A stretch of DNA of 64,000 bases from Octopus sinensis (Eukaryota), in contig NC_043004.1 in the NCBI RefSeq assembly GCF_006345805.1, positions 91,822,001-91,886,000 of the forward strand. The letters run 5' to 3'. Every line of letters begins with the position of its first letter. Position 1 is the stretch's first letter. The notes below the pieces were generated by a model, which did not search any database, was not told the origin of the DNA, and was given only the letters and a program-made list of their open reading frames with translations. A program made the position numbers and the translations under genes. Of this stretch, positions 5,642 through 60,278 are shown piece after piece.

Positions 5642-8600
5642 TCACACGGTTCCTTGCACGCACAACACTCGTGCAACATACTTCCATCTCTTTTGGAACG
5701 TACACTCTGACAGACACCTCTTCTCCAGCCACAGTTTCCTTTTCAAATGAAAAGAAAAAAAGGATCGTAAATTGTCACCAGAGATAAAGTTGCCTGTCTT
5801 AATTCCTTTTATCCTAGTATTCCATACAGCCTCTTTTGCTATTGCTACAACCGTGAGAAAACAATTCTTACCTTCGTTCGTTAGAACTCCCGGTGGGTCA
5901 ATTTTTATAATTGACTCAGTCGACAGCCGTACTCTTCCTTCGCCGGACAACAGATGTTCAGCATAAGCCCACATTTCAGTTATCTCCGGACACTGAACAA
6001 TAGCGTGAGGGACGGTTTCCCTGTCCCCACCGCATCTTGGACAGGTCGGCGACTGACGTTTACCATGTCTTGCGAGCTTATCCCAAACGGGCAAGGCACC
6101 TCTGTAGCATTGCCAGGTTAAGGACTTTTGGAAGTTGTCCAACGTTCTCAACCCGAATGTACGATGAAACAAGCTGTCCAGTTGAATAAATCCGAGACCT
6201 AGAGTCGACCCCAGGCCATCGTCGCATTCAGACTCTACCAACCCACTATATAAAATCCGCTGGCGTTGCCCGAGCGCCGGAACAGCAAGAGGGCCTTACG
6301 GCACTCTTTATGCCACTCACTCGACCTCGGTCTACGAGAACACCAGGCTTCCTGTTCGCAAAAACTCTTGAACTCAGGGAACATTTGTCTGGCCAGCGGA
6401 GACCACACCCGTTCACTATCCAGGAGAATCCAGAGGTGCCTCAACCTCAACGCATGTCTGCGCATCATTAACCAAGGCATCCCTAAACCTCCATTTAAAG
6501 GCTTTTGACAGCAGACAGAGCGTTTCACAAGTGGCGACCTGCCCTTCCACAAAAAGCGAAAGAGCTGTCTCTCCAACCTGATCAACCACGAATCCGGACA
6601 GGGCACGACAGTCAGGCGGTAGGTAATGACCGATGCGATAAACACATTGGCCACTTCCGCCCTCCCTTTCAGGGATAGCCACCGCCAAGACCAGGTCTTG
6701 ACTACTGCAGCCACCCTGCTCAATACCTCCGTCCAGTTCTTCTCTATCTGGAGGCCTGGTCCAAACCAGACTCCCAGCAACTTAACCGGTCCCTCCGTCC
6801 AGCGCCTAACAACACTGTCTGAAGGCATCGACTTGCCAACCCAGGTGCCGAGCTGCAAGCCGACCGACTTTTCCCGGTTAATCTTTGCTCCTGCTACCTC
6901 CTCGTAAGCCTCAATAGTCTTACCTACTTCACGTAGGCGTGCCACTGTGGTTACACTGATAGTGATATCATCCGCGAAAGCCGTAACAAACTCCTCTAGT
7001 CCTGGTTCTCTCGGGATGCCACTCAACCTTTGCAGTAATGGCTCGAGAGCCATCACATACAAAAGTGGTGAAAGCGGACATCCTTGAAGAACCGAGCGTC
7101 TGATGCAGAACGGCTTCGAAAGGAAACCGTTCACCCGAACTATCGAGTCAATGTTGTGGTACAAAGCGATAAACCACCTGAGGAAGCCAAGGCCCAGGCC
7201 AAACCGCGCAAGTACAGTCGCTAGGTATCGATGGTCAACCCTATCAAAAGCTTTAGACTGGTCCAAATGCACCAATGCCCCACCTTTGCCAGATTTATTA
7301 CCAAACCTCTCTATGGTATAGCGAATAAGATGGAGGGTATCCTGAATGGTTCTGCCTGGGATGGCACATGTCTGTGCCTCCCCGACTATACCATTCGCGA
7401 CACGCGCCAACCTTTTTGCTAGAACCTTGGCCAAAATCTTCACTTCTGCGTTTAACAGAGTGATGGGCCTGAAATTCTCTAGAACGTCCCCCTTGTCCGG
7501 GTCCTTTCTGACCAACGTCACTACTCCCCGGCGCACAGATCTGGGGATAAACCCATTCTGTTTCCAGTTCACGTACACGTCAGTCAGTAGTTGCCCGAAC
7601 AAGTCTGGCATACATTTATACAGCTCGTACGGAAGACCATCAAGTCCCGGTGACTTACCCGCTTTACAATCGGCCAAAGCCTCCATCACCTCCTCAAGTG
7701 TGATTGGCCCTTCGCAAGACTCCGCATCCGAGCCCGAGAGGCACGGCAGCCCGGTAAGAAAGTCCTCGAGGGCTCTCCCACCACCAGGACCGCCGTCACC
7801 CCGAACAGCTGGGCGAAGTACTCCCGAAAGACCTCACACATTTTCTCGGGTTCGTTTATCAAGACACCATTTTGATTCGTCAAAGACCGAATAGAGGAAC
7901 TATTTCCTTGCCGAGCTTCCACCACTCGGGCCCATCCAGCGGCTTTGATTCCTTCACTTCCCATTGCACGTAACTTAGCTCTGGTAATACTTCCCATGTG
8001 GTGGGCTTCAAGATGCTGGTTTAACTCCAGTCTTTTCACCCTCGCTTGGTCTGTATTACCAGTCCTCCAGGCTTCTTCTAGTTCCTTAACTAGACCATCT
8101 CCTATTTTACGTCCCTTCTTAGCTAAACTTATGCTAAACCTAATAGACTCATATTTGATGGCTCTTTTTAGGGCGTACCACCATTTGTTATTAATGATGG
8201 TACCTGTTAATGCCCTCTGTATTAACATCTTGATCCGCTTTCTGTACTCCTCAATCGCCAAAAGGGACGTATTGAGTTTCCAGTAGCCAGATCCCTGTCT
8301 ATGCAACTTATCTACCGTCAGTTTACAGGTAACCATCTTGTGGTCACTGTAGCTGACTAGAAAAAACTGTGGACACTCAACTATGGACTTATCTTTTTCT
8401 CTAATTAAAATCCTATCTAGATATGTTCTGGTAGACCTGTCACTATTTGACCACGTCCACTGTGGAGTGTTCGGGTGCTCCAACCTATATGGATCTGCTA
8501 GCTGAAATTGACTTAGCAGATCCCGAAAGCCTGTGTTACATTTTCTGTTCATGTTCGAGTTTGAGCCAACACAATCTGTGTGTGCTGCACATATTGTATT

Positions 8601-9026
8601 AGAGTCTCCTAACACTACTAGTGAATGCGACGTGGCTAGGAACTTTCCTAGGCCACGAAAATATTCAGTTTGCGGGCCAATAATGTTTGGTGCATAAATA
8701 GCGACCAGCCTGATTGTCTTGCCACAACTGAATGTCAAGTCGAGAACGACCAGCCTGCCTTCTGGGTCAGAAAAAACCAACTTTTTCTCGGCTACCCGGT
8801 TTCTTTTTAGTAGGACCAACACCCCACCCCCACCTCCCGCCCGACTCGGAGAAACGTATTTCTCGTAGCCGTTCAGGAGGGGGAGCAGATCTCTTGGCCC
8901 CTTCACCCGGGTTTCCGTTGCAACAATTACATCCAAATTTCTCGACCTGATGTCATTCAGAAAGCGTCCTTGCTTCCAGCTTGACAACAGGCCATGAACA
9001 TTTAAACAACCAATGTGAATAGCCAT
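5642..9026 (-). pseudogene. Tx1 ORF2: APE endonuclease + reverse transcriptase + CCHC zinc finger, two frameshifts
   Basis: MAIHIGCLNVHGL, YSDHK (APE); SPGLDGLP, FRPITLLN, LDQSKAFDRVDH, QGCPLSPLLY, AFADD (RT); CPRCGGDRETVPHAIVQC. Frameshifts near 7800 and 6250 join ORFs 7686-9029, 6235-7689 and 5642-6241. Confidence 0.93.
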
Positions 9027-9037
9027 CACTTACCTGT

Positions 9038-9385
9038 TTAATTAGGATTGTCCGGTGGAGGGGGACCCTTCACCTTTTTTTTATCCAGGGTCGGAGGTGG
9101 ACGGTCTTGGGAAATAGATTTGTCAAAATCCCGTCTCACCACCGACACAGAATTATCAGGTGGAGGGGGAATCTCCACCTTTTCCTTTTCTCGCGGGATC
9201 GGAGCTGGTAATCCATGAAATATCGACTTGTTAAAATCTAATCTCAATGAAGATACAGTCTTTCTGTACTTATTTTGTAGAATTCTATAAGTCTTATTTG
9301 AGACTTCATATATGTCGTAATTGATAAATTCCTCTGAAAGGTTATCAATTTTTTTTACAGTCTTTATGAGTTGAATGTCTCTCAT
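9038..9385 (-). CDS. Pro/Lys-rich ORF between ORF1 and ORF2, probably the frameshifted ORF1 C-terminus
   Basis: 115-aa ORF; its frame stays open upstream into the end of ORF1 (-1 frame); ends 12 nt before the ORF2 ATG. Confidence 0.5.
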   Translation of the reverse strand: MRDIQLIKTVKKIDNLSEEFINYDIYEVSNKTYRILQNKYRKTVSSLRLDFNKSIFHGLPAPIPREKEKVEIPPPPDNSVSVVRRDFDKSISQDRPPPTLDKKKVKGPPPPDNPN

Positions 9386-9414
9386 GAGCTCAGTATCTTT
9401 AGTGTATACGGCTA

Positions 9415-10566
9415 TTATGCCTTTTTCTTCTTTTCTCTTCTGGCAGTCTTTTTTGGTCGTTGTTCTGTAGTAGTCGCCGCTCTCGACTGGGTTGCTGGTT
9501 GTATTTTTCTTTTGTTTGTTGTTTTTTTCTCATCTGTTTCTTCTTTATCTTCTTCCTCTTTGTCTTTTTTCTCCTCTTCCTCCTCTTCTTCATTTTCCTT
9601 GCAGTTCCTTCGAATGTGGCCTAATTGACCACATAAAAAACATCGAGGTTTTCGGCCCTCAACAAACACCACGAGGTTCTCCTCCCCTACCTCAATTGTC
9701 TCAGGAATTGTTTGAATTATTTTAGGGTCCGCTTGAATGAGAAGATTAATTGTTTTACCATCCCAGCGTGGGTTTTCCGTAGCGGTAGCCTGGAGGAGAG
9801 TAATTTTTTCTACCTCTTTGATTAGGACTGCCGCCAACAACCACATAGGTTCGACCTCTGGCGGGACCCTTGTAATTTTTATTCGCGACGTCCTCATCCC
9901 CATATAATAGGGTATTAACTCCACGTCGTTCGTTTTCAACGTTTCCACTGAGTTCTTGTGTGCTATTTCTTTATTGGTGAACCTTACTTCCACCGTTCCG
10001 AATTTTTTTCCTCTTCTCAGAAATACTACGTCGCCCAATATTGGCTTTAAGCACTTTTCTATTTTCTCTTCTGACATTCTTTCAATTTTTCTATTTTGTA
10101 GACAATATGTTTTGAAAATTATTGTTTTTTGCTTTTCTTCCTGTAATAACTTTTGCGGAGGTTCAATTTTCACACTGTTGTCATTTATTTCCATCATTTT
10201 GCTGTATTTCATAATTTCGCTTTTATTCGTCGACAGTATCTGGGTTCCACCCCCAGCAGCCAACGCAAAACTTTTTTTTCCATTTTTTGGTTCTATCTGG
10301 ATGCTAGGCACATCAATTATTCTCTTCGACACAATGCCTTTGTTCTCTGGCAAAGTCGGAAACTCTTCTGGTGAAAGTTCTGACGAGCTCTCAGACACAT
10401 CTCCAAAAATATCAAATATATTATCCTTCTGCTATTCCTTCTTGTAGCGGGGGAAACCCCTATTTCCTTGTCTGTAGTTGGCTCCTCGCCGGACATGTAT
10501 TTCCTCCTCTCAACAGGAGAAACAAGTATTTCTGCTCCAACGGTAGGCTCCATGCTAGACGACATT
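9415..10566 (-). CDS. Tx1 ORF1 (gag-like, zinc knuckle), likely frameshift near 10430
   Basis: CFLCGQLGHIRRNC CCHC knuckle, preceded by an RRM-like region and followed by an acidic/basic low-complexity tract; upstream MSSSMEPT segment is in another frame. Confidence 0.8.
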
Positions 10567-11569: not shown

Positions 11570-11617
<48 letters not shown>

Positions 11618-11722
11618 GCACACACACACAAACACACCCTGAAATATTCACATATATAAAACAGTCATCTATCAGTTTCCGTGTACGAAATCCACTCACA
11701 GGGCTTTAGTTGGCCTGAGGCT

Positions 11723-18721: not shown

Positions 18722-19587
18722 ATATATATTATATTTGAAAAATAATGCCTTTCGGCATATATATATATATATATATCTACAAATATATATATATACATAT
18801 ATGTGTGTGTGTCTGTGTGTATATATATATATTCATCTATTTAAGGGAGATGACAAATATCTTGTAGAGTTACTTCCCTTACACTTTATAATATATATGG
18901 GTGTGTATATGTGTATATATATGTATATGTATCTCTTAAAGGGAGGTTACTAAAAATATCTTCTAGAGTTACTTCCTTCACACTCCATATATATATATAT
19001 ATATATATGTTTTTGTATATTAATTCAGAGTGATTACTTGATAAGTGTAAGCACCTGTATATGTCAGCTTGTTGCAGAGGTGAGAGGGTATATGCATCAA
19101 ATGAAATAAAAAAACAGAACACAAAGGCTGTCGCGGTACACGTGTTTCGAGCTTTATAAAACAACCTGTTCTTACATCAATGTATAATCGACATAACAGA
19201 TGGTTTTGAAGCTCTCTTCAGCCACATGCAATTGCTATACCAAAGACTTACATCACATTATGCAAAATCCGAAAAGGTACATTTGGTATTATCTATAATG
19301 GTAGGTATATTGAGTTTCACAGAGAAATTATGTTTATAAATCTTCATAATCAAATAGGTGTGTAGGGTATCATTGGATTTCGAAAATCCGTCCATACTGT
19401 ATCATCAGTCAACATAGAGTGAATGTTGACTAGATTCGAGTGGGTTCATTCCTCTTGTAAGGGAAGTAAGTAAGGAGAAGTGAAGGTGGAGAAAAGGAAG
19501 TAATAGAGAAAAGAAATAGGGAGAGTATGGAGAGGAAAGAACAGAGAGAAGAAAGAGAGAAAATTGGGAAGAATAACCCAATAAGAT

Positions 19588-20300
19588 ACATAATTTATTA
19601 ACGATGAAACAATTGTATAGAGTTAATCTATTTTTTCGTCATCTTTCCTTTGTCCTGCTCGCTTACATTCTTGGCGTGCTGAATTAATCCTTGAGAACAA
19701 TTCCTTGGTGGCGGATTCCCCTTGCGGATCTATATCTAGCGTTAGAGCGTACACATAGTGGATTCTCTCATTGTTTTGTATTAATAATTTTTACTGTATT
19801 CCAGTCTTTTATACGCTAGGACACTTGGTGTTTAAACTGATGTTATTAATTAATATTCAGTTTTTTCACCCTTATTTTGACTTTAATTATAAATTAATAT
19901 GTTCTCAAACCGGCAGTAAATTACTTATGTAGCATTTATATCCGACGATTTAGCGCGCCAGAATGAGGGCATTTGAATGTAACTGTGAATATAATCGGCT
20001 GTACCGTTCGTCTCTGTTCAACCTCGTGTGGATTTTGCCGTTCGGTTCGACAAATTATATTCTGATGTACTCTACTGACGATTCGAAAATACTTATGTAA
20101 GTAAAATTACATAATTTATTAACGATGAAACAATTGTATAGAGCTAATCTATTTTTTCGTTATTTTTCATTTGTCCTGCTCGCTTACATTCTTGGCGCGC
20201 TGAATTAATCCTTGAGAACAATTCCTTGGTGGCAGATTCCCCTTGCAGGTCTATATCTAGCGTTAGAGCGTCCACATAGTGGATTCTCTCTTATTGTTTT
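19588..20300 (+). mobile_element. Hammerhead-bearing tandem non-coding element (521-bp period; PLE pseudo-LTR or retrozyme-like)
   Basis: About 200-bp direct repeats at 19588-19790 and 20109-20300; complete hammerhead core at 20070-20143 and its 3' half at 19588-19622. Confidence 0.7.
20070..20143 (+). ncRNA. Minimal type I hammerhead ribozyme
   Basis: CTCTA-CTGACGA-[helix II including TTATGTAA/TTACATAA]-GAAA-CAATTG-TA-TAGAG; helix I 5 bp; palindromic helix III; helix II closing pair is T-T. Confidence 0.7.
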
Positions 20301-20316
20301 ATATATATATATATAT

Positions 20317-20436
20317 GCTTACGGCCATATCACGTTGAAAGCACCGGTTCTCGTCTGATCACCGAAGTTAAGCAACGTCAAGCCTAGTCAGTACTTAGAT
20401 GGGTGACCGCTTGGGAAACCTAGGTGCAGTAAGCAT
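20317..20436 (+). rRNA. 5S rRNA: Full-length 5S rRNA gene copy or retrocopy, no oligo-T terminator
   Basis: 120 nt GCTTACGGCCATATCACGTTGAAAGCACCGG..AGTACTTAGATGGGTGACCGCTTGGGAAACC..GTAAGCAT; terminal helix pairs with one mismatch; box A/C region intact. Confidence 0.93.
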
Positions 20437-20440
20437 AGCA

Positions 20441-20729
20441 GTGGAGGCGCAATGGCCTAGTGGTTAGAGCAGCGGACTCGCGGTCGCAGGATCGCGGTTT
20501 CGATTCCCAGACCGGGCGTTGTGTGTGTTTATTGAGCGAAAACACCTAAAAGCTCCACGATGCTCCAGCAGGGGATGGTGGTGATCCCTGCTGTACTCTT
20601 TCACCACTCTTTCTTCTGTTGGCCTGCTAGCTTAGCCAGCGGGGTGGCGTCATTCGAAGGCTAAAACAATGCGACGCATTGTGACCAGCGATGTGTAACA
20701 ACATCTGATGGTCTGGTCGGTCACGTGAT

Positions 20730-20736
<7 letters not shown>
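20441..20736 (+). mobile_element. SINE family R, tail type b (..GGTCACGTGATCACGTGA(TA)n)
   Basis: Full tRNA-like head; second copy at 53803-54107. Confidence 0.88.
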
Positions 20737-20767
<31 letters not shown>

Positions 20768-20779
20768 TACACACACATA

Positions 20780-21385
20780 CGAGTGGTGTATGAAAAGTTT
20801 TGAGCCTAACCTAAAAACGGGGCTGCTAGATAGCTGAACAATTTTTTCTGGTAAGTATAGTCTTTCCGGAGTATTCTTTATCATTTTCATGATTCTTATA
20901 TTTCTATATTTTGTTGTTGCAGATTTCTGAATAAACAAGTGTCGAGGTTAAAAAGAAAATGAAGAAAACTGAGTATCGTGCTATCACAAAGTACCTTCAT
21001 ATGAAAGGCATGACTCCATCAGAAATCCATGAAGATATAGTGAGAACCTTAACAGGCAATGCTTCTTCATATGCAACAGTCACATGCTAGGTAAATGAAT
21101 ACAAGCGTGACAGGGAGAGTGTGGAAATGATCCCAGACCAGGGAGACCTCCAACTGCGACCACCAAGGAAACCTTGATCTTGCTCTTGGTATGATAATAC
21201 AAGATCGCTGAATAGCATGTTTTCAGATAGCCGAAAGACTGGGCATCTCAATTGAAAGAGCAAACAACATTGTGACAAAAGAACTTGGGTTCTCAAAGGT
21301 TTCCGCAAGGATGGTCCGTCGCCTTTTGACTTCTGAACAGAAACGCATCAGGTGCAATTTTGCCCACGAGCAATCTGGAACTGTC
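20780..21385 (+). mobile_element. mariner transposon 5' relic
   Basis: TA followed by CGAGTGGTGTATGAAAAGTTTTGAGCC terminus; MKKTEYRAITKYLHMKGMTPSEIHED..RPGRP and a WVPRLLT-like motif, with frameshifts. Confidence 0.75.
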
Positions 21386-24419: not shown

Positions 24420-24424
<5 letters not shown>

Positions 24425-24825
24425 GGACTGAACCCGGAACCATGTGGCTGGTTAGCAAGCTACTTACCACACAGCCACTCCTGCGCCTATATATATATAT
24501 CTCTCTTTACTCTTTACTCTTTTACTTGTTTCAGTCATTTGACTGCGGCTATGCTGGAGCACCGCCTTTAGCCGAACAAATCGACCCCGGGACTTATTCT
24601 TTGTAAGCCCAGTACTTATTCTATCGGTCTCTTTTGCCGAACCGCTAAGTGAATGGGACGTAAACACACCAGCATCGGTTGTCAAGCAATGCTAGAGGGA
24701 CAAACACAGACACACAAACATACACACACATACATATATATATATATATACGACAGGCTTCTTTCAGTATCCGTCTACCAAATCCACTCACAAGGCACTA
24801 GTCGGCCCGAGGCTATAGCAGAAGA
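24420..24825 (-). mobile_element. SINE family C (GGCGCAGGAGTGGCTGTGTGGTAAG head), rearranged
   Basis: Matches the copies at 45057-45468 and 53225-53480. Confidence 0.75.
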
Positions 24826-26336: not shown

Positions 26337-26720
26337 GGAAGCACTCCGTCGGTTACGACGACGAGGGTTCCAGTTGATCCGAATCAACGGAACAGCCTGC
26401 TCGTGAAATTAACGTGTAAGTGGCTGAGCACTCTACAGACACGTGTACCCTTAACGTAGGTCTCGGGGATATTCAGCGTGACACAGAGAGTGACAAGGCC
26501 GGCCCTTTGAAATACAAGTACAACAGAAACAGGAAGTAAGAGTGAGAGAAAGTTGCGGTGAAAGAGTACAGCAGGGATCACCACTATCCCCTGCCGGAGC
26601 CGCGTGGAGCTTTAGGTGTTTTCGCTCAATAAACACTCACAACGTCCGGTCTGGGAATCGAAACCGCGATCCTATGACCGCGAGTCCGCTGCCCTAACCA
26701 CTGGGCCATTGCGCCTCCAC
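26337..26720 (-). mobile_element. SINE family R, tail type a (..CGTAACCGACGGAGTGC)
   Basis: Near-identical to 29977-30364 and 57786-58168. Confidence 0.9.
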
Positions 26721-29935: not shown

Positions 29936-31612
29936 CAGAGGTTGGACAAAATAATGGAAATACCTAGCATCATAGCGGGGGGAAGCACTCCGTCGGTTAC
30001 GACGATGAGGGTTCCGGTTGATCCGAATCAACGGAACAGCCTGCTCGTGAAATTAACGTGTAAGTGGCTGAGCACTCCACAGACACGTGTACCCTTAACG
30101 TAGTTCTCGGGGATATTCAGCGTGACACAGAGAGTGACAAGGCCGGCCCTTTGAAATACAGGTACAACAGAAACAGGAAGTAAGAGTGAGAGAAAGTTGT
30201 GGTGAAAGAGTACAGCAGGGATCACCACCATCCCCTGCCGGAGCCTCGTGGAGCTTTAGGTGTTTTCGCTCAATAAACACTCACAACGCCCGGTCTGAGA
30301 ATCGAAACCGCGATCCTATGACTGCGAGTCCGCTGCCCTAACCACTGGGCCATTGCGCCTCCACTAGCATCATAGCATCAACATTTTGAAATATCTACAA
30401 AACCGTCAAAAGCTTGTTTATTTTTATGTTTTTTTGATTTATTATCAGTGTTGCTTAATATTTTTTGCTAAAATTGCTGTTTCTTTTCAGATATAATCAG
30501 AAAAAGGTAATTAAAATCTCTTAAAATGACAGATCTATCGGACTTTCAAAGAGATCAAATTGTTGGTGCTCATATGGCAGGTGCTAGCGTAACGAAAACA
30601 GCTGGAATGTTTGGTGTTTCAAGAAGTACTGTCTCGAAAGTAATGACAGCCTTTGAGAAAGAGGAAAAAACCTCCTCATCGAAACAAAAGTCCGGAAGAA
30701 AACCAAAATTTTAAGATAGGAAGCGTCGAACTCTGATGCGAATTGTTTGAAAGGATCACAAAAGTACAGCTTCCAAAATTACTGTAGAGCTTAATGACCA
30801 CCTCGAGAACCCAGTTTCCACAGAAACTGTTTGCCGGGAGCTGCACAAAGCCGGATTTCATGGGAGGGCTGCAATCGGAAAGCAACTGCCTTCAAAAACA
30901 AACGTTGTAAAGCGTTTAGAGTGGAGTAAAAACCTACAGAATTAATGGCTAGAGGAGTGGAAGAATGTTATTTTTTCGGACAAGTCATCCTTTAGCTTAT
31001 TTCCGACCACCGGCCGAGTATACGTGTGAAGACAGCCAAAAGAAGCATTTGACCCAGACTGCCTTCTTCCAACTGTTAAACATGGAGGAGGATCTGTAAT
31101 GATCGGTGGTGGGGCTATATCTTGGAAATCCGCCGGCCCAGTGGTTTCCCTTCATGGCAGAATTAATAGTGAAAACTATTTAAGCATTTTATCTGATTAA
31201 ATCCATCCTATGGTTGCAGAACTGTTTCCAGAGAGAAACGCAATCTTTCAGGATGATAATGCACCAATTCACACAGCTAAAGTTGTTACTGAATGGCATG
31301 AGGAATATTCTAGTGAAGTTGAATATCTTATCTAGCCACCACAGTGCCCAGATCTCAATATTATTGAACATTTATGGTGCATTTTAGAAAAACAAGTAAG
31401 GAGTCGATCTCCTCCACCATGATCACTACAAGAACTGGAGACTGTTTTAGCTGAAGAATGGACAAAAATTCCTTTGGAAACAATTCAAACTTTGTACGAG
31501 TCCGTACCTCGTAGAATTCAAGCTGTAATTACAGCCAAAGGTGGTCCTACTTCATATTAAAATAAATTTGTTTGAAATTTTAAGGCGTTTCCATTATTTT
31601 GTCCAACCCCTG
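29936..31612 (+). mobile_element. Tc1-family DNA transposon, transposase pseudogene 30526-31560
   Basis: TIRs CAGAGGTTGGACAAAATAATGGAAA / TTTCCATTATTTTGTCCAACCCCTG; MTDLSDFQRDQIVG, SGRKPK, VIFSDKS, FQDDNAPIH, PDLNIIEHLW; internal stops. Confidence 0.92.
29977..30364 (-). mobile_element. SINE family R (tail a) nested in the Tc1 element
   Basis: Flanked by the duplication CTAGCATCATAGC (29964-29976 and 30364-30376). Confidence 0.92.
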
Positions 31613-44098: not shown

Positions 44099-46702
44099 CA
44101 CTGGTCAACAGCCAATTTTCATCAGGGATATTATATGGTGTGTTATATGTAGTTTTGTCCGCAGATTTCAAAAATGTAATCGGTTTCCTTCTATCAGTCA
44201 CAGTTTTTCTGATGAGTTAACAGAGGTATATAACTCCCATCAGCGGTATCGCTACATGTAAACGTCTTATACAGGTAAATTCTGACTTTTGTTTTATAAC
44301 TATTTGTATTCATTTTGTAATTTTATGTTTTCATAATCTTTTCTTTTCATAAATTTTACTTTCTGTTTAAGGTGCCAAGTCATCATCATCATCAAATTCC
44401 ACTCAGGATGTCAAGGCATTGCAAGAACAGTCCTGATATATTTTGTCATGTCTGTGGTTCATTTACCACCAAAGCTCAGCATCGTGCCATCACAAGTGAA
44501 ATCAAGACGATCTACCAGTTATACTTTGGCTGCACTCTCGGGGATCAAGATAAGAGTTGGGCCCCACACATCATCTGCTCTGCTTGTTCAAATGGACTAA
44601 GGGATTGGCTAAATAAGAGGAAGAGAGCAATGCCGTTTGCAATACCTATGATATGGAGAGAGCCAAAGGATCATTTCATGGACTGTTATTTCTGCAACTT
44701 GGAATCAGCAAGAAGACCAGTACCACACAACGATGATGATCTTCCTATTCCAATAACACCAGAAAATGGCCTTCAGATGTCTGACGAAGATGTATTTCCT
44801 GAAGAAATGGGCTGTGAAAGACACCGAAGTGGATGCAAATTTCACGATTGGAAATGAAGACGTACCGCAGAAATTTTCTTAAGGAGAGTTAAATGATTTT
44901 GTTAGAGACTTGTCATTGTCGAAGGTTAAAGCTGAACTATTAGCATCTCGCCCACAGGAAAAGTATCTGCTTAAGATATTACTTATTTCAGGAAGAGAAA
45001 TAGGGATCTGACTTTATGCTTCTCTGTTGATGGACCACTTTGTTTCAGTAATAACACTCTTTTACACTTTTACTCTTTTACTTGTTTCAGTCATTTGACT
45101 GCGGCCATGCTGGAGTACCGCCTTTAGTAGAGCAAATCGATCCCAGGACTTATTCTTTGTAAGCCTAGTACTTATTCTCTCGGTCTCTTTTGTCGAACCG
45201 CTAAGTGACGGGGACGTAAACACACCAGCATCGGTTGTCAAGCGATGTTGGGGGAACAAACGCAGACACACAAACATATATATATATATGTATACATATA
45301 TACGACGGGCTTCTTTCAGTTTCTGTCTACCAAATCCACTCACAAGGCTTTGGTCGGCCCGAGGCTATAGTAGAAGACACTTGCCCAAGGTGCCACGCAG
45401 TGAGACTGAACCCGGAACCATGTGGTTGGTAAGCAAGCTACTTACCACACAGCCACTCCTGCGCCTATAACTGATGAGTTATTTCGCTATTTGTTTCAAG
45501 AGCATGTTTCAGCTGAATGGTGCTTATTCATTGATTCATCTAAGAGAAACCACAAGGCAGTACTACTACACAACGGCAATAAGAAACCATCCATTCCCAT
45601 AGGACATTCAGTACACGTAAAGGAGTGTTATGAAAACATGTGAGTACTCCTCAATGCCATAAAGTATACAAACTACAGCTGAAAAATATGTGGAGGCTTG
45701 AAGGTGATTGGAATGTTGATGGGAATACAATCTGGGTTCACGAAATATTGTTGCTTTTTATTCCTATGGGACAGTCGTGCAACTAACAAGTACTATGTGC
45801 AATCAGATTGGACTTTTCGAAAATCATACGGGCCAGGTGTTTCTAGCGTCCAGAGTAAACCACTTTTAAACCCATAAAATATTCTTCTTTCTCCTCTTCA
45901 CATAAAGCTTGGCCTCATGAAATAATTGCCAGGAAAAGCTCAAAAGGTTTTGAATATGTGAAAGCCAAATTTCCAAAAATCACCGAGGCAAAACTGAAGG
46001 AGGGCGTATTCATAGGTCCGCAGATAAAAGAACTCCAGAAGGACAACCACTTCCGCACAGCACTGGATGAGACTGAGCTTAAAGCCTCGGATTTCTTCAA
46101 ATGTCTCTGTGAAAATTTCCGAGGCAACAAGAGATCTCTAGAGTTTAGAAATGAAGTGAAATGTCTTCTAGACTCCTGCGCTGCAATGGGTTGTCGGATG
46201 TCACTAAAAGTCCATTTCCTTGATTCAAATCTGGACTCTTTTGCAGAGAACTTTGAAGTAGTGTCTGATGAGCAAGGGGAACGCTTTAATCAAATATTGC
46301 ATCGATGGAACAACGATATCAAGGATTTTGGAATGCAGGAATGTTAGCTGACTATTGTTGGATGTTATGCAGGGATGAACCTGAGATAAAACACCATAGA
46401 AAGTCCAAATCCCAAAGATTTTAAGCTGTTATGCATTTCAGTGTATTGTAAATTATTTGTATACAATAATTTTAATTTTGTGCAATAAAAAGCCATGAAA
46501 TTATCGTATCTTGTGTTCACTATACTTTATACAGATATGCTTTACGTATCCTATAAGTTAAAAAAGCAGGTATTATTAACATGAAAATGTGACCTGATAG
46601 AGAAAATCGGACTTCAGATTCGTAATCAGCATCAAAAATTAACCCAGGAAAGTCAATCAGCAACTCTGATTATTAAAAAAAGTTTCATTTTGTTGACCAG
46701 TG
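44099..46702 (+). mobile_element. Second Chapaev3-like DNA transposon, transposase pseudogene about 44408-46424
   Basis: Perfect 12-bp TIR CACTGGTCAACA with TAA on both sides; CKNSPDIFCHVCG, GDQDKSWAPH, FIDSSK, GFTKYCCF, LHIKLG, GPQIK, VSDEQGERF. Confidence 0.88.
45057..45468 (-). mobile_element. SINE family C (CORE-like CTTGGGCAAGTGTC block) nested in the Chapaev3-like transposase
   Basis: tRNA-like head at 45468; the transposase frame resumes after it (ITDELFRYLF..WCLFIDSSK). Confidence 0.85.
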
Positions 46703-46899: not shown

Positions 46900-50250
<3,351 letters not shown>

Positions 50251-53150: not shown

Positions 53151-53224
53151 AGGTCCTAAAACGATTCATAGGTTAATGCGTCTTGGTCTTTTTCTTCGCA
53201 TTAATCAACACACACATACGTCTT

Positions 53225-53480
53225 TTAGTCTTTTAGTATTTTACTTGTTTCAGTCATTTGACTGCGGCCATGTTGGAGCACCGCCTTTTAGACGAGCAAA
53301 TCGACCCCAGGACTTATTCTTTGTAAGCCTAGTACTTATTCTATCGGTCTCTTTTGCCGAACCGCTAAGTGACGGGGACGTAGACGCACCAGCACCGAGG
53401 CTATAGTAGAAGACACTTGCTGAAGGTGCCACACAGTGGGAATGAACCCGGAACCATGTGGTTGGTAAGCAAGCTACTTA
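53225..53480 (-). mobile_element. SINE family C, internally deleted
   Basis: Matches blocks of 45057-45468. Confidence 0.75.
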
Positions 53481-53802: not shown

Positions 53803-53805
<3 letters not shown>

Positions 53806-54100
53806 AGGCGCAATGGCCCAGTGGTTAGGGCAGCGGACTCGCGGTTGTAGGATCGCGGTTTCGATTCCCAGACCGGGCGTTGTGAGTGTTTATTGAGCGA
53901 AAACACCTAAAGGTTCCACGAGGCTCCGGCAGGGGGTGGTGATCCCTGCTGTACTCTTTCACCGCTCTTTCTCCCACTCTTTCTTCTGTTGGCCTGCTCG
54001 CTTAGCCAGCTGGGTGGCATCATTCGAAGGCTAAAACAATGCGAACGCATTGTGACCAGCGATGTGTAACAACGTCCGATGGTCTGGTCGGTCACGTGAT

Positions 54101-54107
<7 letters not shown>
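53803..54107 (+). mobile_element. SINE family R, tail b, within TG/TA microsatellites
   Basis: Matches 20441-20736 and ends GATCACGTGA(TA)n. Confidence 0.88.
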
Positions 54108-54143
<36 letters not shown>

Positions 54144-60178: not shown

Positions 60179-60278
60179 NNNNNNNNNNNNNNNNNNNNNN
60201 NNNNNNNNNNNNNNNNNNNNNNNNNNNNNNNNNNNNNNNNNNNNNNNNNNNNNNNNNNNNNNNNNNNNNNNNNNNNNN
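60179..60278. other. Assembly gap (100 N)
   Basis: Run of N. Confidence 1.

What the first reader, a model, noticed from the sequence alone, without database searches (positions are those of the whole stretch)
20301..20769. Full-length 5S rRNA fused head-to-tail to a full-length tRNA SINE, inside a (TA)n tract
Seen: a 120-nt 5S sequence with no oligo-T terminator is followed after a 4-nt linker (AGCA) by a complete family R SINE. The whole unit has (TA)n on both sides, and the other tail-b copy (53803) also ends in (TA)n. Known: 5S-headed SINEs exist, and RT template-switch chimeras (U6/L1, 5S/L1) are described in mammals. Inference: this is either a one-off 5S-SINE chimeric retrocopy or a dimeric 5S+tRNA SINE family with two Pol III promoters, transcribable as one RNA of about 420 nt.
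Basis: partly seen in the sequence, partly recalled or inferred. Interest (0 to 1): 0.75.

Follow-up and report, generated by a model that had tools for sequence, protein, structure and literature searches.

The report
5S rRNA–SINE chimeric retrocopy in octopus
A complete copy of 5S ribosomal RNA sits five bases in front of a complete short mobile element (SINE) in what is almost certainly an octopus genome. This looks like a reverse transcriptase that jumped from one RNA template to another, a known way for mobile elements to gain new promoters, so it is a clean example but not a new kind of thing.

Summary
Window 20317-20435 is a full-length 5S rRNA copy (Rfam 105 bits, E 5e-22) and the only 5S-like sequence in the 64 kb. 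It has no T-run terminator. Five bases later (TAGCA), at 20441, a SINE starts at the exact first base of its family, as defined by copies bounded by target-site duplications (TSDs). The whole unit lies between (AT)8 and (AT)12, as does the only other copy with the same 3' tail. The best reading is a single retrotransposed unit. Its joint was made when the reverse transcriptase reached the 5' end of the SINE RNA and switched to the 3' end of 5S rRNA. The alternatives (two independent insertions, a real 5S gene, a 5S array) fit poorly.

A 2026 Octopus vulgaris repeat annotation lists four 'SINE 5S' consensus families (9.8 Mb). That makes the family reading about as likely as the orphan reading. 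Composite 5S+tRNA SINE heads (AmnSINE1-type Deu-SINEs, HaSE3) and small-RNA/LINE chimeras are already described, so this is a new member of a known kind, of moderate to low interest.

The parts
20301..20316 (.). (AT)8 directly abutting base 1 of the 5S copy. It is the upstream part of the (TA)n target tract and a possible left target-site duplication.
20317..20435 (+). Full-length 5S rRNA copy. It keeps the internal control region (box C-like TAGATGGGTGACCGCTTG), has two helix mismatches (G7.A, C15.A) and has no terminator.
20436..20440 (+). Linker TAGCA between the 5S copy and the SINE. Its AGCA repeats the last four bases of the 5S copy.
20441..20614 (+). SINE head and body shared by all 8 copies in the window. 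Box A is at 20453-20463 and the box-B-like motif at 20496-20506. This copy has a private 13-bp deletion near 20590.
20615..20735 (+). 'Tail-b' 3' region, shared only with copy 53805-54141. It ends in the palindromic CACGTGATCACGTG (20722-20735).
20736..20760 (+). (AT)12.5, most likely the simple-repeat tail of the SINE.
20761..20768 (.). ATATATAT after a phase break in the repeat, followed by (AC)n. This is a candidate right target-site duplication or remainder of the target tract (inference).
20798..20801 (+). First run of four or more T downstream of the 5S start. It is the earliest canonical Pol III stop for a read-through transcript of about 485 nt.
53805..54141 (+). The comparison copy: a plain tail-b SINE without 5S, preceded by (TA)n(TG)n and ending in (AT)17.

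Best explanation
The 5S copy, the 5-nt linker and the SINE entered this site together, as one retrotransposed unit.

Inferred course of events: a LINE reverse transcriptase primed on the (AU)n tail of a tail-b SINE RNA at a nick in a (TA)n microsatellite. It copied the SINE to its first base and added a few extra bases. It then switched template to the 3' end of a mature 5S rRNA, whose oligo-U had been trimmed, and copied that to base 1. This locus is either that primary product or a daughter copy of an earlier product of the same kind. I put the two at about equal odds.

The copy is now a slowly decaying element. The SINE part differs from the family consensus by 3-4 % and carries a 13-bp deletion, and two 5S helix pairs are broken. 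It still carries a 5S-type internal promoter, a tRNA-type A/B-box promoter and a LINE-recognisable tail. That combination is what a new 5S-headed SINE would need.

Shown: the anatomy, the exact ends and the flanks. Inferred: the template switch, the single event and any transcription.
For: (1) The 5S copy is complete from base 1 to the end of helix I. It scores like a working 5S (105 bits) and has no T-run, no A-rich or repeat tail and no spacer sequence. This is what an RNA-derived copy that never needed its own priming tail would look like.

(2) The SINE is complete to its first base. TSD-bounded copies at 30365(-) (TSD GCTATGATGCTA) and 51182(-) (TSD ATTAGGCTACA) start GTGGAGG right after the TSD. 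Copies at 26720(-) and 58168(-) carry 2 and 1 extra bases there, so this retrotransposition machinery does add bases at 5' junctions.

(3) The two parts lie in the same orientation, 5 nt apart. The chance of that is about 7e-4.

(4) The upstream (AT)8 abuts the 5S start, not the SINE start. The only other tail-b copy sits in a (TA)n tract in the same way. Only 3.5 % of positions are that close to a (TA)n tract.

(5) Literature: template switching from a tRNA-SINE RNA to 5S rRNA is the accepted origin of HaSE3 (PMC3272025). It is also the accepted origin of the 5S+tRNA composite heads of Deu-SINEs (Nishihara 2006, as cited in PMC4824008 and PMC4758252). In U6/L1 chimeras the small RNA is likewise full length, in sense orientation and on the 5' side.
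Against: No unambiguous target-site duplication can be read, because both flanks are (TA)n. No empty orthologous or paralogous site was found: the 197-bp repeat upstream does not continue past the unit. No reference octopus 5S sequence was available, so the age of the 5S part could not be compared with that of the SINE part. In mammals 5S/L1 chimeras are mostly truncated and antisense, unlike this one. The template switch itself is inferred from the product only.
Confidence: 0.77

Rival explanations
1. A refinement of the best explanation, not exclusive with it. The locus is a daughter copy of an amplified composite SINE family (5S head + full tRNA-type SINE) that is transcribed from the 5S internal promoter and mobilised through the tail-b 3' end.
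For: Meeting one such unit in a single 64-kb window is far more likely if there are thousands of copies than if chimeras arise at the roughly 1e-4 per-insertion rate seen in mammals (one search lists 253 candidate chimeras). The O. vulgaris repeat annotation lists 4 consensus families classed 'SINE 5S' covering 9.83 Mb (PMC13282606 supplementary table 1), and the window is from Octopus or a close relative. The unit has every part a SINE needs.
Against: Only 1 of the 8 SINE copies in the window has the 5S, and there are no 5S fragments elsewhere. The architecture of the O. vulgaris '5S' families is not described, and they could be 5S rDNA or a different 5S-headed SINE. Their 7 'recent insertions' average 6 kb, which does not look like a SINE. 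Retroposed 5S promoters are thought to be weak without upstream signals (Kapitonov and Jurka, as cited in PMC3272025). The junction pattern found nothing in the collections that could be scanned, but these hold little or no octopus DNA.
Confidence: 0.42
2. Two independent events. Either a tail-b SINE landed in a (TA)n tract and a 5S retropseudogene later landed 5 nt upstream of it, or the order was reversed.
For: The genome is crowded with repeats: 8 SINE copies and 85 (TA)n tracts in 64 kb. Nested and adjacent insertions are therefore common.
Against: The 5S copy has no tail from which it could have been primed, and no TSD of its own. Exact end-to-end abutment in the same orientation has a chance of about 7e-4. 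No (TA)n remains between the two parts, although tail-b copies sit in (TA)n tracts.
Confidence: 0.07
3. A genuine dispersed 5S gene (orphon), or the edge of a 5S array, into whose terminator a SINE inserted.
For: The 5S scores as high as functional genes and keeps its internal control region. An A/T-rich stretch lies upstream.
Against: This is the only 5S in the 64 kb. No T-run remains either before or directly after the SINE. The microsatellite abuts base +1, with no spacer-like sequence. Two helix pairs are broken.
Confidence: 0.05
4. The same single insertion, but the joint was made at the RNA level before reverse transcription, by ligation of 5S rRNA to the SINE RNA as shown for U6/L1 with RtcB. 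Or the joint is an assembly artefact.
For: RNA ligation precedes retrotransposition of U6/L1 chimeras (PMC6789731, listed).
Against: RtcB needs a 2',3'-cyclic phosphate and a 5'-OH, which 5S rRNA and a primary Pol III transcript normally lack (general knowledge). Five extra bases at the joint fit non-templated addition better. The junction is not in simple sequence and the two parts share no overlap that could mislead an assembler.
Confidence: 0.06

Closest known systems
Composite 5S+tRNA heads of Deu-SINEs (AmnSINE1 type; Nishihara, Smit and Okada 2006, as cited in PMC4824008 and PMC4758252)
   Same: [quoted passage not shown]
   Different: [quoted passage not shown] Here both parts are complete, they are joined by a 5-nt linker, and only one copy is known. 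Whether this SINE body is a Deu domain was not tested; the resemblance is from memory only.
HaSE3 of Helicoverpa armigera (PMC3272025)
   Same: A 5S-headed element that shares body and tail with a tRNA-derived SINE of the same genome (HaSE1). It is interpreted as a template-switch chimera, and its copies carry TSDs.
   Different: In HaSE3 the 5S replaces the tRNA head, whereas here the tRNA-type head is kept whole behind the 5S. HaSE3 is shown to be multi-copy and present in several species.
Small-RNA/LINE-1 chimeric retrocopies of mammals (U6/L1, 5S/L1; Buzdin et al.; bioRxiv 10.1101/2025.02.02.635956)
   Same: One insertion event joins a Pol III RNA copy to the 5' side of a retroelement that supplies the tail. 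As with U6 in U6/L1, the small RNA here is full length and in sense orientation.
   Different: The 3' partner here is a full-length SINE rather than a 5'-truncated LINE. Mammalian 5S/L1 chimeras are mostly truncated and antisense. The tail here is (AT)n in a (TA)n target rather than poly(A).
'SINE 5S' families in the Octopus vulgaris repeat annotation (PMC13282606, supplementary table 1)
   Same: The same genus or a close relative, and repeats classed as 5S-headed SINEs (4 consensus sequences, 9.83 Mb).
   Different: Only an automated class label and totals are published. No structure or sequence is given, so identity with this unit is untested.

Membership tests
Template-switch chimeric retrocopy (small RNA + retroelement 3' part) | The 5' part is a copy of a cellular Pol III or small RNA, starts at base 1 of that RNA, and lacks the gene's flanks and terminator | tested here: met
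   Rfam model 1-120 matched at 20317-20435. (AT)8 abuts base 1. No T-run follows.
Template-switch chimeric retrocopy (small RNA + retroelement 3' part) | The 3' part is a retroelement in the same orientation that keeps its own 3' tail | tested here: met
   Full-length SINE on the + strand ending CACGTGATCACGTG(AT)12, like copy 53805-54141.
Template-switch chimeric retrocopy (small RNA + retroelement 3' part) | One target-site duplication flanks the whole chimera | tested here: inconclusive
   Both flanks are (AT)n, and ATATATAT follows a phase break at 20760/20761. This is compatible with a TSD of up to 8 bp, but it cannot be told apart from the microsatellite.
Template-switch chimeric retrocopy (small RNA + retroelement 3' part) | An empty orthologous site shows both parts absent together | not testable with these tools
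   No octopus genome could be reached. The paralogous 197-bp repeat does not extend past the unit.
SINE family in the SINEBase sense (PMC3531059) | A short (<1 kb) interspersed repeat with at least 60 % identity to tRNA, 5S or 7SL RNA over at least 60 nt | tested here: met
   The unit is 419 nt without its tail, and the full 5S match covers 119 nt.
SINE family in the SINEBase sense (PMC3531059) | [quoted passage not shown] | not testable with these tools
   One copy in 64 kb. The source genome is not searchable. The only indirect hint is the 4 'SINE 5S' families in O. vulgaris.
5S-derived SINEs (SINE3 / 5S-Deu type, HaSE3) | A 5S-derived head with boxes A, IE and C at the 5' end of the element | tested here: met
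   Full 5S including the box C-like TAGATGGGTGACCGCTTG.
5S-derived SINEs (SINE3 / 5S-Deu type, HaSE3) | Body and tail shared with a tRNA-derived SINE or a partner LINE of the same genome | tested here: met
   Head and body are shared with 7 other copies, and the tail with copy 53805. No partner LINE tail was found in the window.
5S rRNA gene or 5S rDNA array | Tandem repetition, or at least a T-run terminator directly after the gene | tested here: not met
   A single 5S in 64 kb. The first T4 is 363 nt downstream of the 5S end.
tRNA-derived SINE (the 3' partner) | A head recognisable as a tRNA | tested here: inconclusive
   Perfect box A TGGCCTAGTGG and box-B-like GGTTTCGATTC, 32 nt apart. ARAGORN, the Rfam tRNA model and folding do not recognise a tRNA.

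The most novel reading that the evidence does not exclude
The unit is a member of a still recognisable, possibly still active, dimeric SINE family of Octopus in which a complete 5S rRNA and a complete tRNA-type SINE head coexist. That would be a living intermediate of the head-exchange process that in vertebrates is known only from its end products (AmnSINE1-type Deu-SINEs). It would also be the first 5S-headed SINE whose structure is characterised in a mollusc.
Probability: 0.4. Interest if true: 0.5.

Novelty: new member of a known kind. Interest (0 to 1): 0.3.

Why it matters
SINEs make up roughly a tenth of octopus genomes (PMC13282606, PMC8967140). New SINE families are thought to arise when a reverse transcriptase splices a new Pol III-transcribed RNA onto an existing element. 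This locus shows that first step in undamaged form: both RNAs are complete, the joint is readable to the base, and the tail and target are visible. If more copies exist, it would explain what the unexplored 'SINE 5S' class of octopus repeat annotations is. It would also give a system in which promoter take-over by 5S can be followed. If it is unique, it is simply a well-preserved chimeric retropseudogene.

Tried and rejected
Reaching the source genome, all without result:
- A junction pattern with a variable gap in metagenome contigs gave 0 hits.
- A 17-mer from the 5S 3' end gave 15 loci, all chance 17-19-mers.
- The SINE head gave 0 hits in viral contigs and in genome contigs.
- Exact look-ups of window ORFs, including the ORF that crosses the junction, found nothing on record.
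- The LINE RT search gave only relatives at 64 % identity or less. The loci fetched from them (ENA ERZ21867824, Argonauta hians, two JGI contigs) hold neither the SINE nor a 5S.
- A 75-aa peptide encoded by the SINE hit a single UniRef entry of Octopus bimaculoides with no contig on record.
- A full-text search for four diagnostic oligomers gave 0 papers.

Getting a reference cephalopod 5S sequence from old papers also failed, as did reading Nishihara 2006 and Albertin 2015.

Rejected readings:
- 5S array: there is a single copy.
- Tandem duplication providing an empty site: the 197-bp repeat stops at the (TA)n, and the sequence after the unit has no similarity to the sequence after the first repeat copy (score 19 against a shuffle mean of 20).
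- The weak Rfam miRNA-like hits at 20718-20791 are (TA)n artefacts far below gathering scores.

Full report
**What is there.** Reading 20101-21000 and scanning the whole window with Rfam confirm a full-length 5S rRNA copy at 20317-20435 on the + strand. It matches model positions 1-120 at 105.1 bits against a gathering score of 38, with E 5.3e-22. It is the only gathering-level Rfam hit in 64 kb. A local alignment of the 5S against the rest of the window, both strands, and against the 200 nt upstream of every other SINE copy finds nothing above shuffled controls. The locus is therefore not part of a 5S array. The copy keeps the internal control region; the box C region reads TAGATGGGTGACCGCTTG. 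It has two non-standard pairs (G7.A in helix I and C15.A in helix II; the latter sits in a CpG context) and one deleted position.

**The 5S end and the linker.** Helix I ends at 20434. The next bases are A, T, AGCA and then GTGGAGGCGC. There is no run of four or more T anywhere between 20301 and 20797.

**The SINE.** BLAST of the unit against the window and an alignment with flanks show seven further copies of the element that starts at 20441:
- 53805-54141 (+), 91 % identity over 340 nt, and the only copy that shares the 3' region;
- 30365, 58168 and 26720 (-), 92-93 % over the first 174 nt, with a different tail;
- 51182 (-) and 10880 (+), with a third tail;
- 63812 (+), cut by the window end.

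Copies 30365 and 51182 have clear target-site duplications (GCTATGATGCTA and ATTAGGCTACA) that end exactly in front of GTGGAGG. Copies 26720 and 58168 have TSDs followed by 2 and 1 extra bases. The element's first base is therefore the G at 20441, and the copy behind the 5S is complete.

The head has a perfect box A (TGGCCTAGTGG, 20453-20463) and a box-B-like GGTTTCGATTC (20496-20506). ARAGORN, the Rfam tRNA model at E<=10 and folding do not recognise a tRNA. 'tRNA-derived' is thus an inference from the promoter boxes.

Against the consensus of the eight copies, the copy at 20441 has about six clear substitutions in about 165 aligned bases, plus a private 13-bp deletion. The tabulated 6.2 % is inflated by misalignment at that deletion. 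The other tail-b copy differs by 3.5 % and the three tail-a copies by 1.7-2.8 %.

**The flanks.** (AT)8 at 20301-20316 abuts base 1 of the 5S. The SINE ends CACGTGATCACGTG at 20722-20735, followed by (AT)12.5 at 20736-20760, a phase break, ATATATAT, and then (AC)n. The other tail-b copy ends in the same palindrome plus (AT)17 and is preceded by about 200 bp of (CA)n(TA)n(TG)n. None of the six copies with other tails abuts (TA)n. (TA)>=6 tracts cover 3.0 % of the window, and 3.5 % of positions lie within 3 nt of one.

I infer three things from this. (AT)n is the tail of this subfamily. Its insertions go into (TA)n tracts. In the unit under study, the upstream part of the tract touches the 5S start, where a plain copy would have its own 5' end. 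A pre-insertion site ...TTGTTTT(AT)8(AC)n with a TSD of up to 8 bp fits, but it cannot be proven inside a microsatellite.

**How it most likely arose.** The evidence has five parts:
- The 5S copy runs exactly from base 1 to the mature 3' end. It has no terminator, no spacer and no tail of its own.
- The SINE is complete to its first base.
- The two parts are in the same orientation, 5 nt apart, with a chance of about 7e-4.
- Regular copies show extra bases at their 5' junctions.
- One microsatellite context surrounds the whole.

Together these point to a single retrotransposition event. The reverse transcriptase primed on the SINE tail, ran to the 5' end of the SINE RNA, and continued on the 3' end of a 5S rRNA. 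The linker's AGCA repeats the last four bases of the 5S copy. That would fit an abortive first jump, but four bases are too few to weigh.

This mechanism is the published explanation for HaSE3 (PMC3272025). It is also the published explanation for the 5S+tRNA composite heads of some Deu-SINEs (Nishihara 2006, as cited in PMC4824008 and PMC4758252). It matches the geometry of U6/L1 chimeras, whereas mammalian 5S/L1 chimeras are mostly truncated and antisense.

Independent insertions, a true 5S gene hit by a SINE, ligation before reverse transcription, and an assembly artefact are each possible but fit less well. Together I give them about 0.2.

**One-off or family: not decided.** The window comes from a cephalopod. 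The LINE RT ORF at 6238-7689(-) has its best named hit in Argonauta hians at 61 % identity. It is most likely Octopus itself or a close relative, because a 75-aa peptide encoded by the commonest SINE tail matches only UniRef A0A0L8H1P9 of Octopus bimaculoides, at 88 %. None of the searchable collections holds that genome, so the junction could not be counted.

Two indirect arguments favour a family. First, meeting such a unit in one 64-kb window is much likelier if copies are numerous. Second, the 2026 repeat annotation of O. vulgaris lists four consensus families classed 'SINE 5S' covering 9.83 Mb (PMC13282606). However, that label is automated and the structures are not given. The seven 'recent' insertions average 6 kb, which looks more like rDNA than like a SINE. 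I therefore split the 0.77 for a single-unit retrocopy into about 0.42 for a family member and 0.35 for an orphan.

**Function.** Nothing shows that the unit is transcribed. If TFIIIA and Pol III use the 5S control region, the transcript would read through the SINE, which has only T3 runs, to TTTT at 20798-20801. That is about 485 nt. It would carry the 3' end that the partner LINE recognises, so the unit has what a new 5S-headed SINE needs. Retroposed 5S promoters are held to be weak without upstream signals (cited in PMC3272025). The A/T-rich 26 nt upstream might or might not substitute for those signals; this is speculation.

**Verdict.** The feature is real and cleanly preserved. The phenomenon is known and the host clade is new. 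This is a new member of a known kind, with interest 0.3. It would rise to about 0.5 if a genome search shows an amplified family with both heads intact.

Noticed in passing
window 19587-19781 and 20108-20304: A 197-bp direct repeat (94 % identity, 521 bp apart). The second copy ends exactly at the (AT)8 in front of the 5S. The sequence after the unit does not resemble the sequence after the first copy, so it gives no empty site. The nature of the repeat is unknown.
   Followed up: partly
window 53805-54141 and 20441-20760: Both copies of the 'tail-b' SINE subfamily end in the palindrome CACGTGATCACGTG plus (AT)n and sit inside (TA)n tracts, while the six copies with other tails do not. This suggests a partner LINE that targets, or primes on, TA microsatellites. 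Dong/R4 LINEs are abundant in octopus (PMC13282606), but no such LINE end was found in the window.
   Followed up: partly
window 30365-29975(-), 26720-26330(-), 58168-57780(-); 51182(-), 10880(+): One SINE head and body (about 174 nt) is joined to three different 3' tails within one window. The tail-a copies are young (1.7-2.8 % from consensus) with 11-13-bp TSDs. This is modular 'jigsaw' SINE evolution.
   Followed up: partly
window 5642-10398 (-): A nearly intact LINE. ORF1 has a CCHC knuckle (9415-10398), followed by an AP endonuclease (7686-9029), an RT (6235-7689) and zf-RVT (5642-6241). Two frame breaks split ORF2. The best relative is in Argonauta hians at 61 % identity.
   Followed up: partly
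window 24421-24796, 45057-45469, 53224-53480, 11609-11704: A second interspersed repeat family (78-96 % identity across the matched segments). Its two segments occur in different orders at different loci and lie next to (TA)n tracts. It was not classified.
   Followed up: no
window 20959-21090: A short ORF with a weak HTH_48 (Mos1 transposase N-terminus) match directly downstream of the unit. It is a mariner remnant.
   Followed up: no
window 44372-46347: A degraded transposase-like gene (zinc-ribbon ORF of 161 aa and a second ORF of 129 aa), interrupted by a copy of the second repeat family at 45057-45469.
   Followed up: no
window 47535-49190; whole window: Very high microsatellite load: 85 (TA)>=6 tracts, many compound (TA)n(TG)n tracts, and about 1.6 kb of (TATC)n/(ATAC)n/(TGTA)n arrays. 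A run of 100 N (a scaffold gap) lies at 60179-60278.
   Followed up: no
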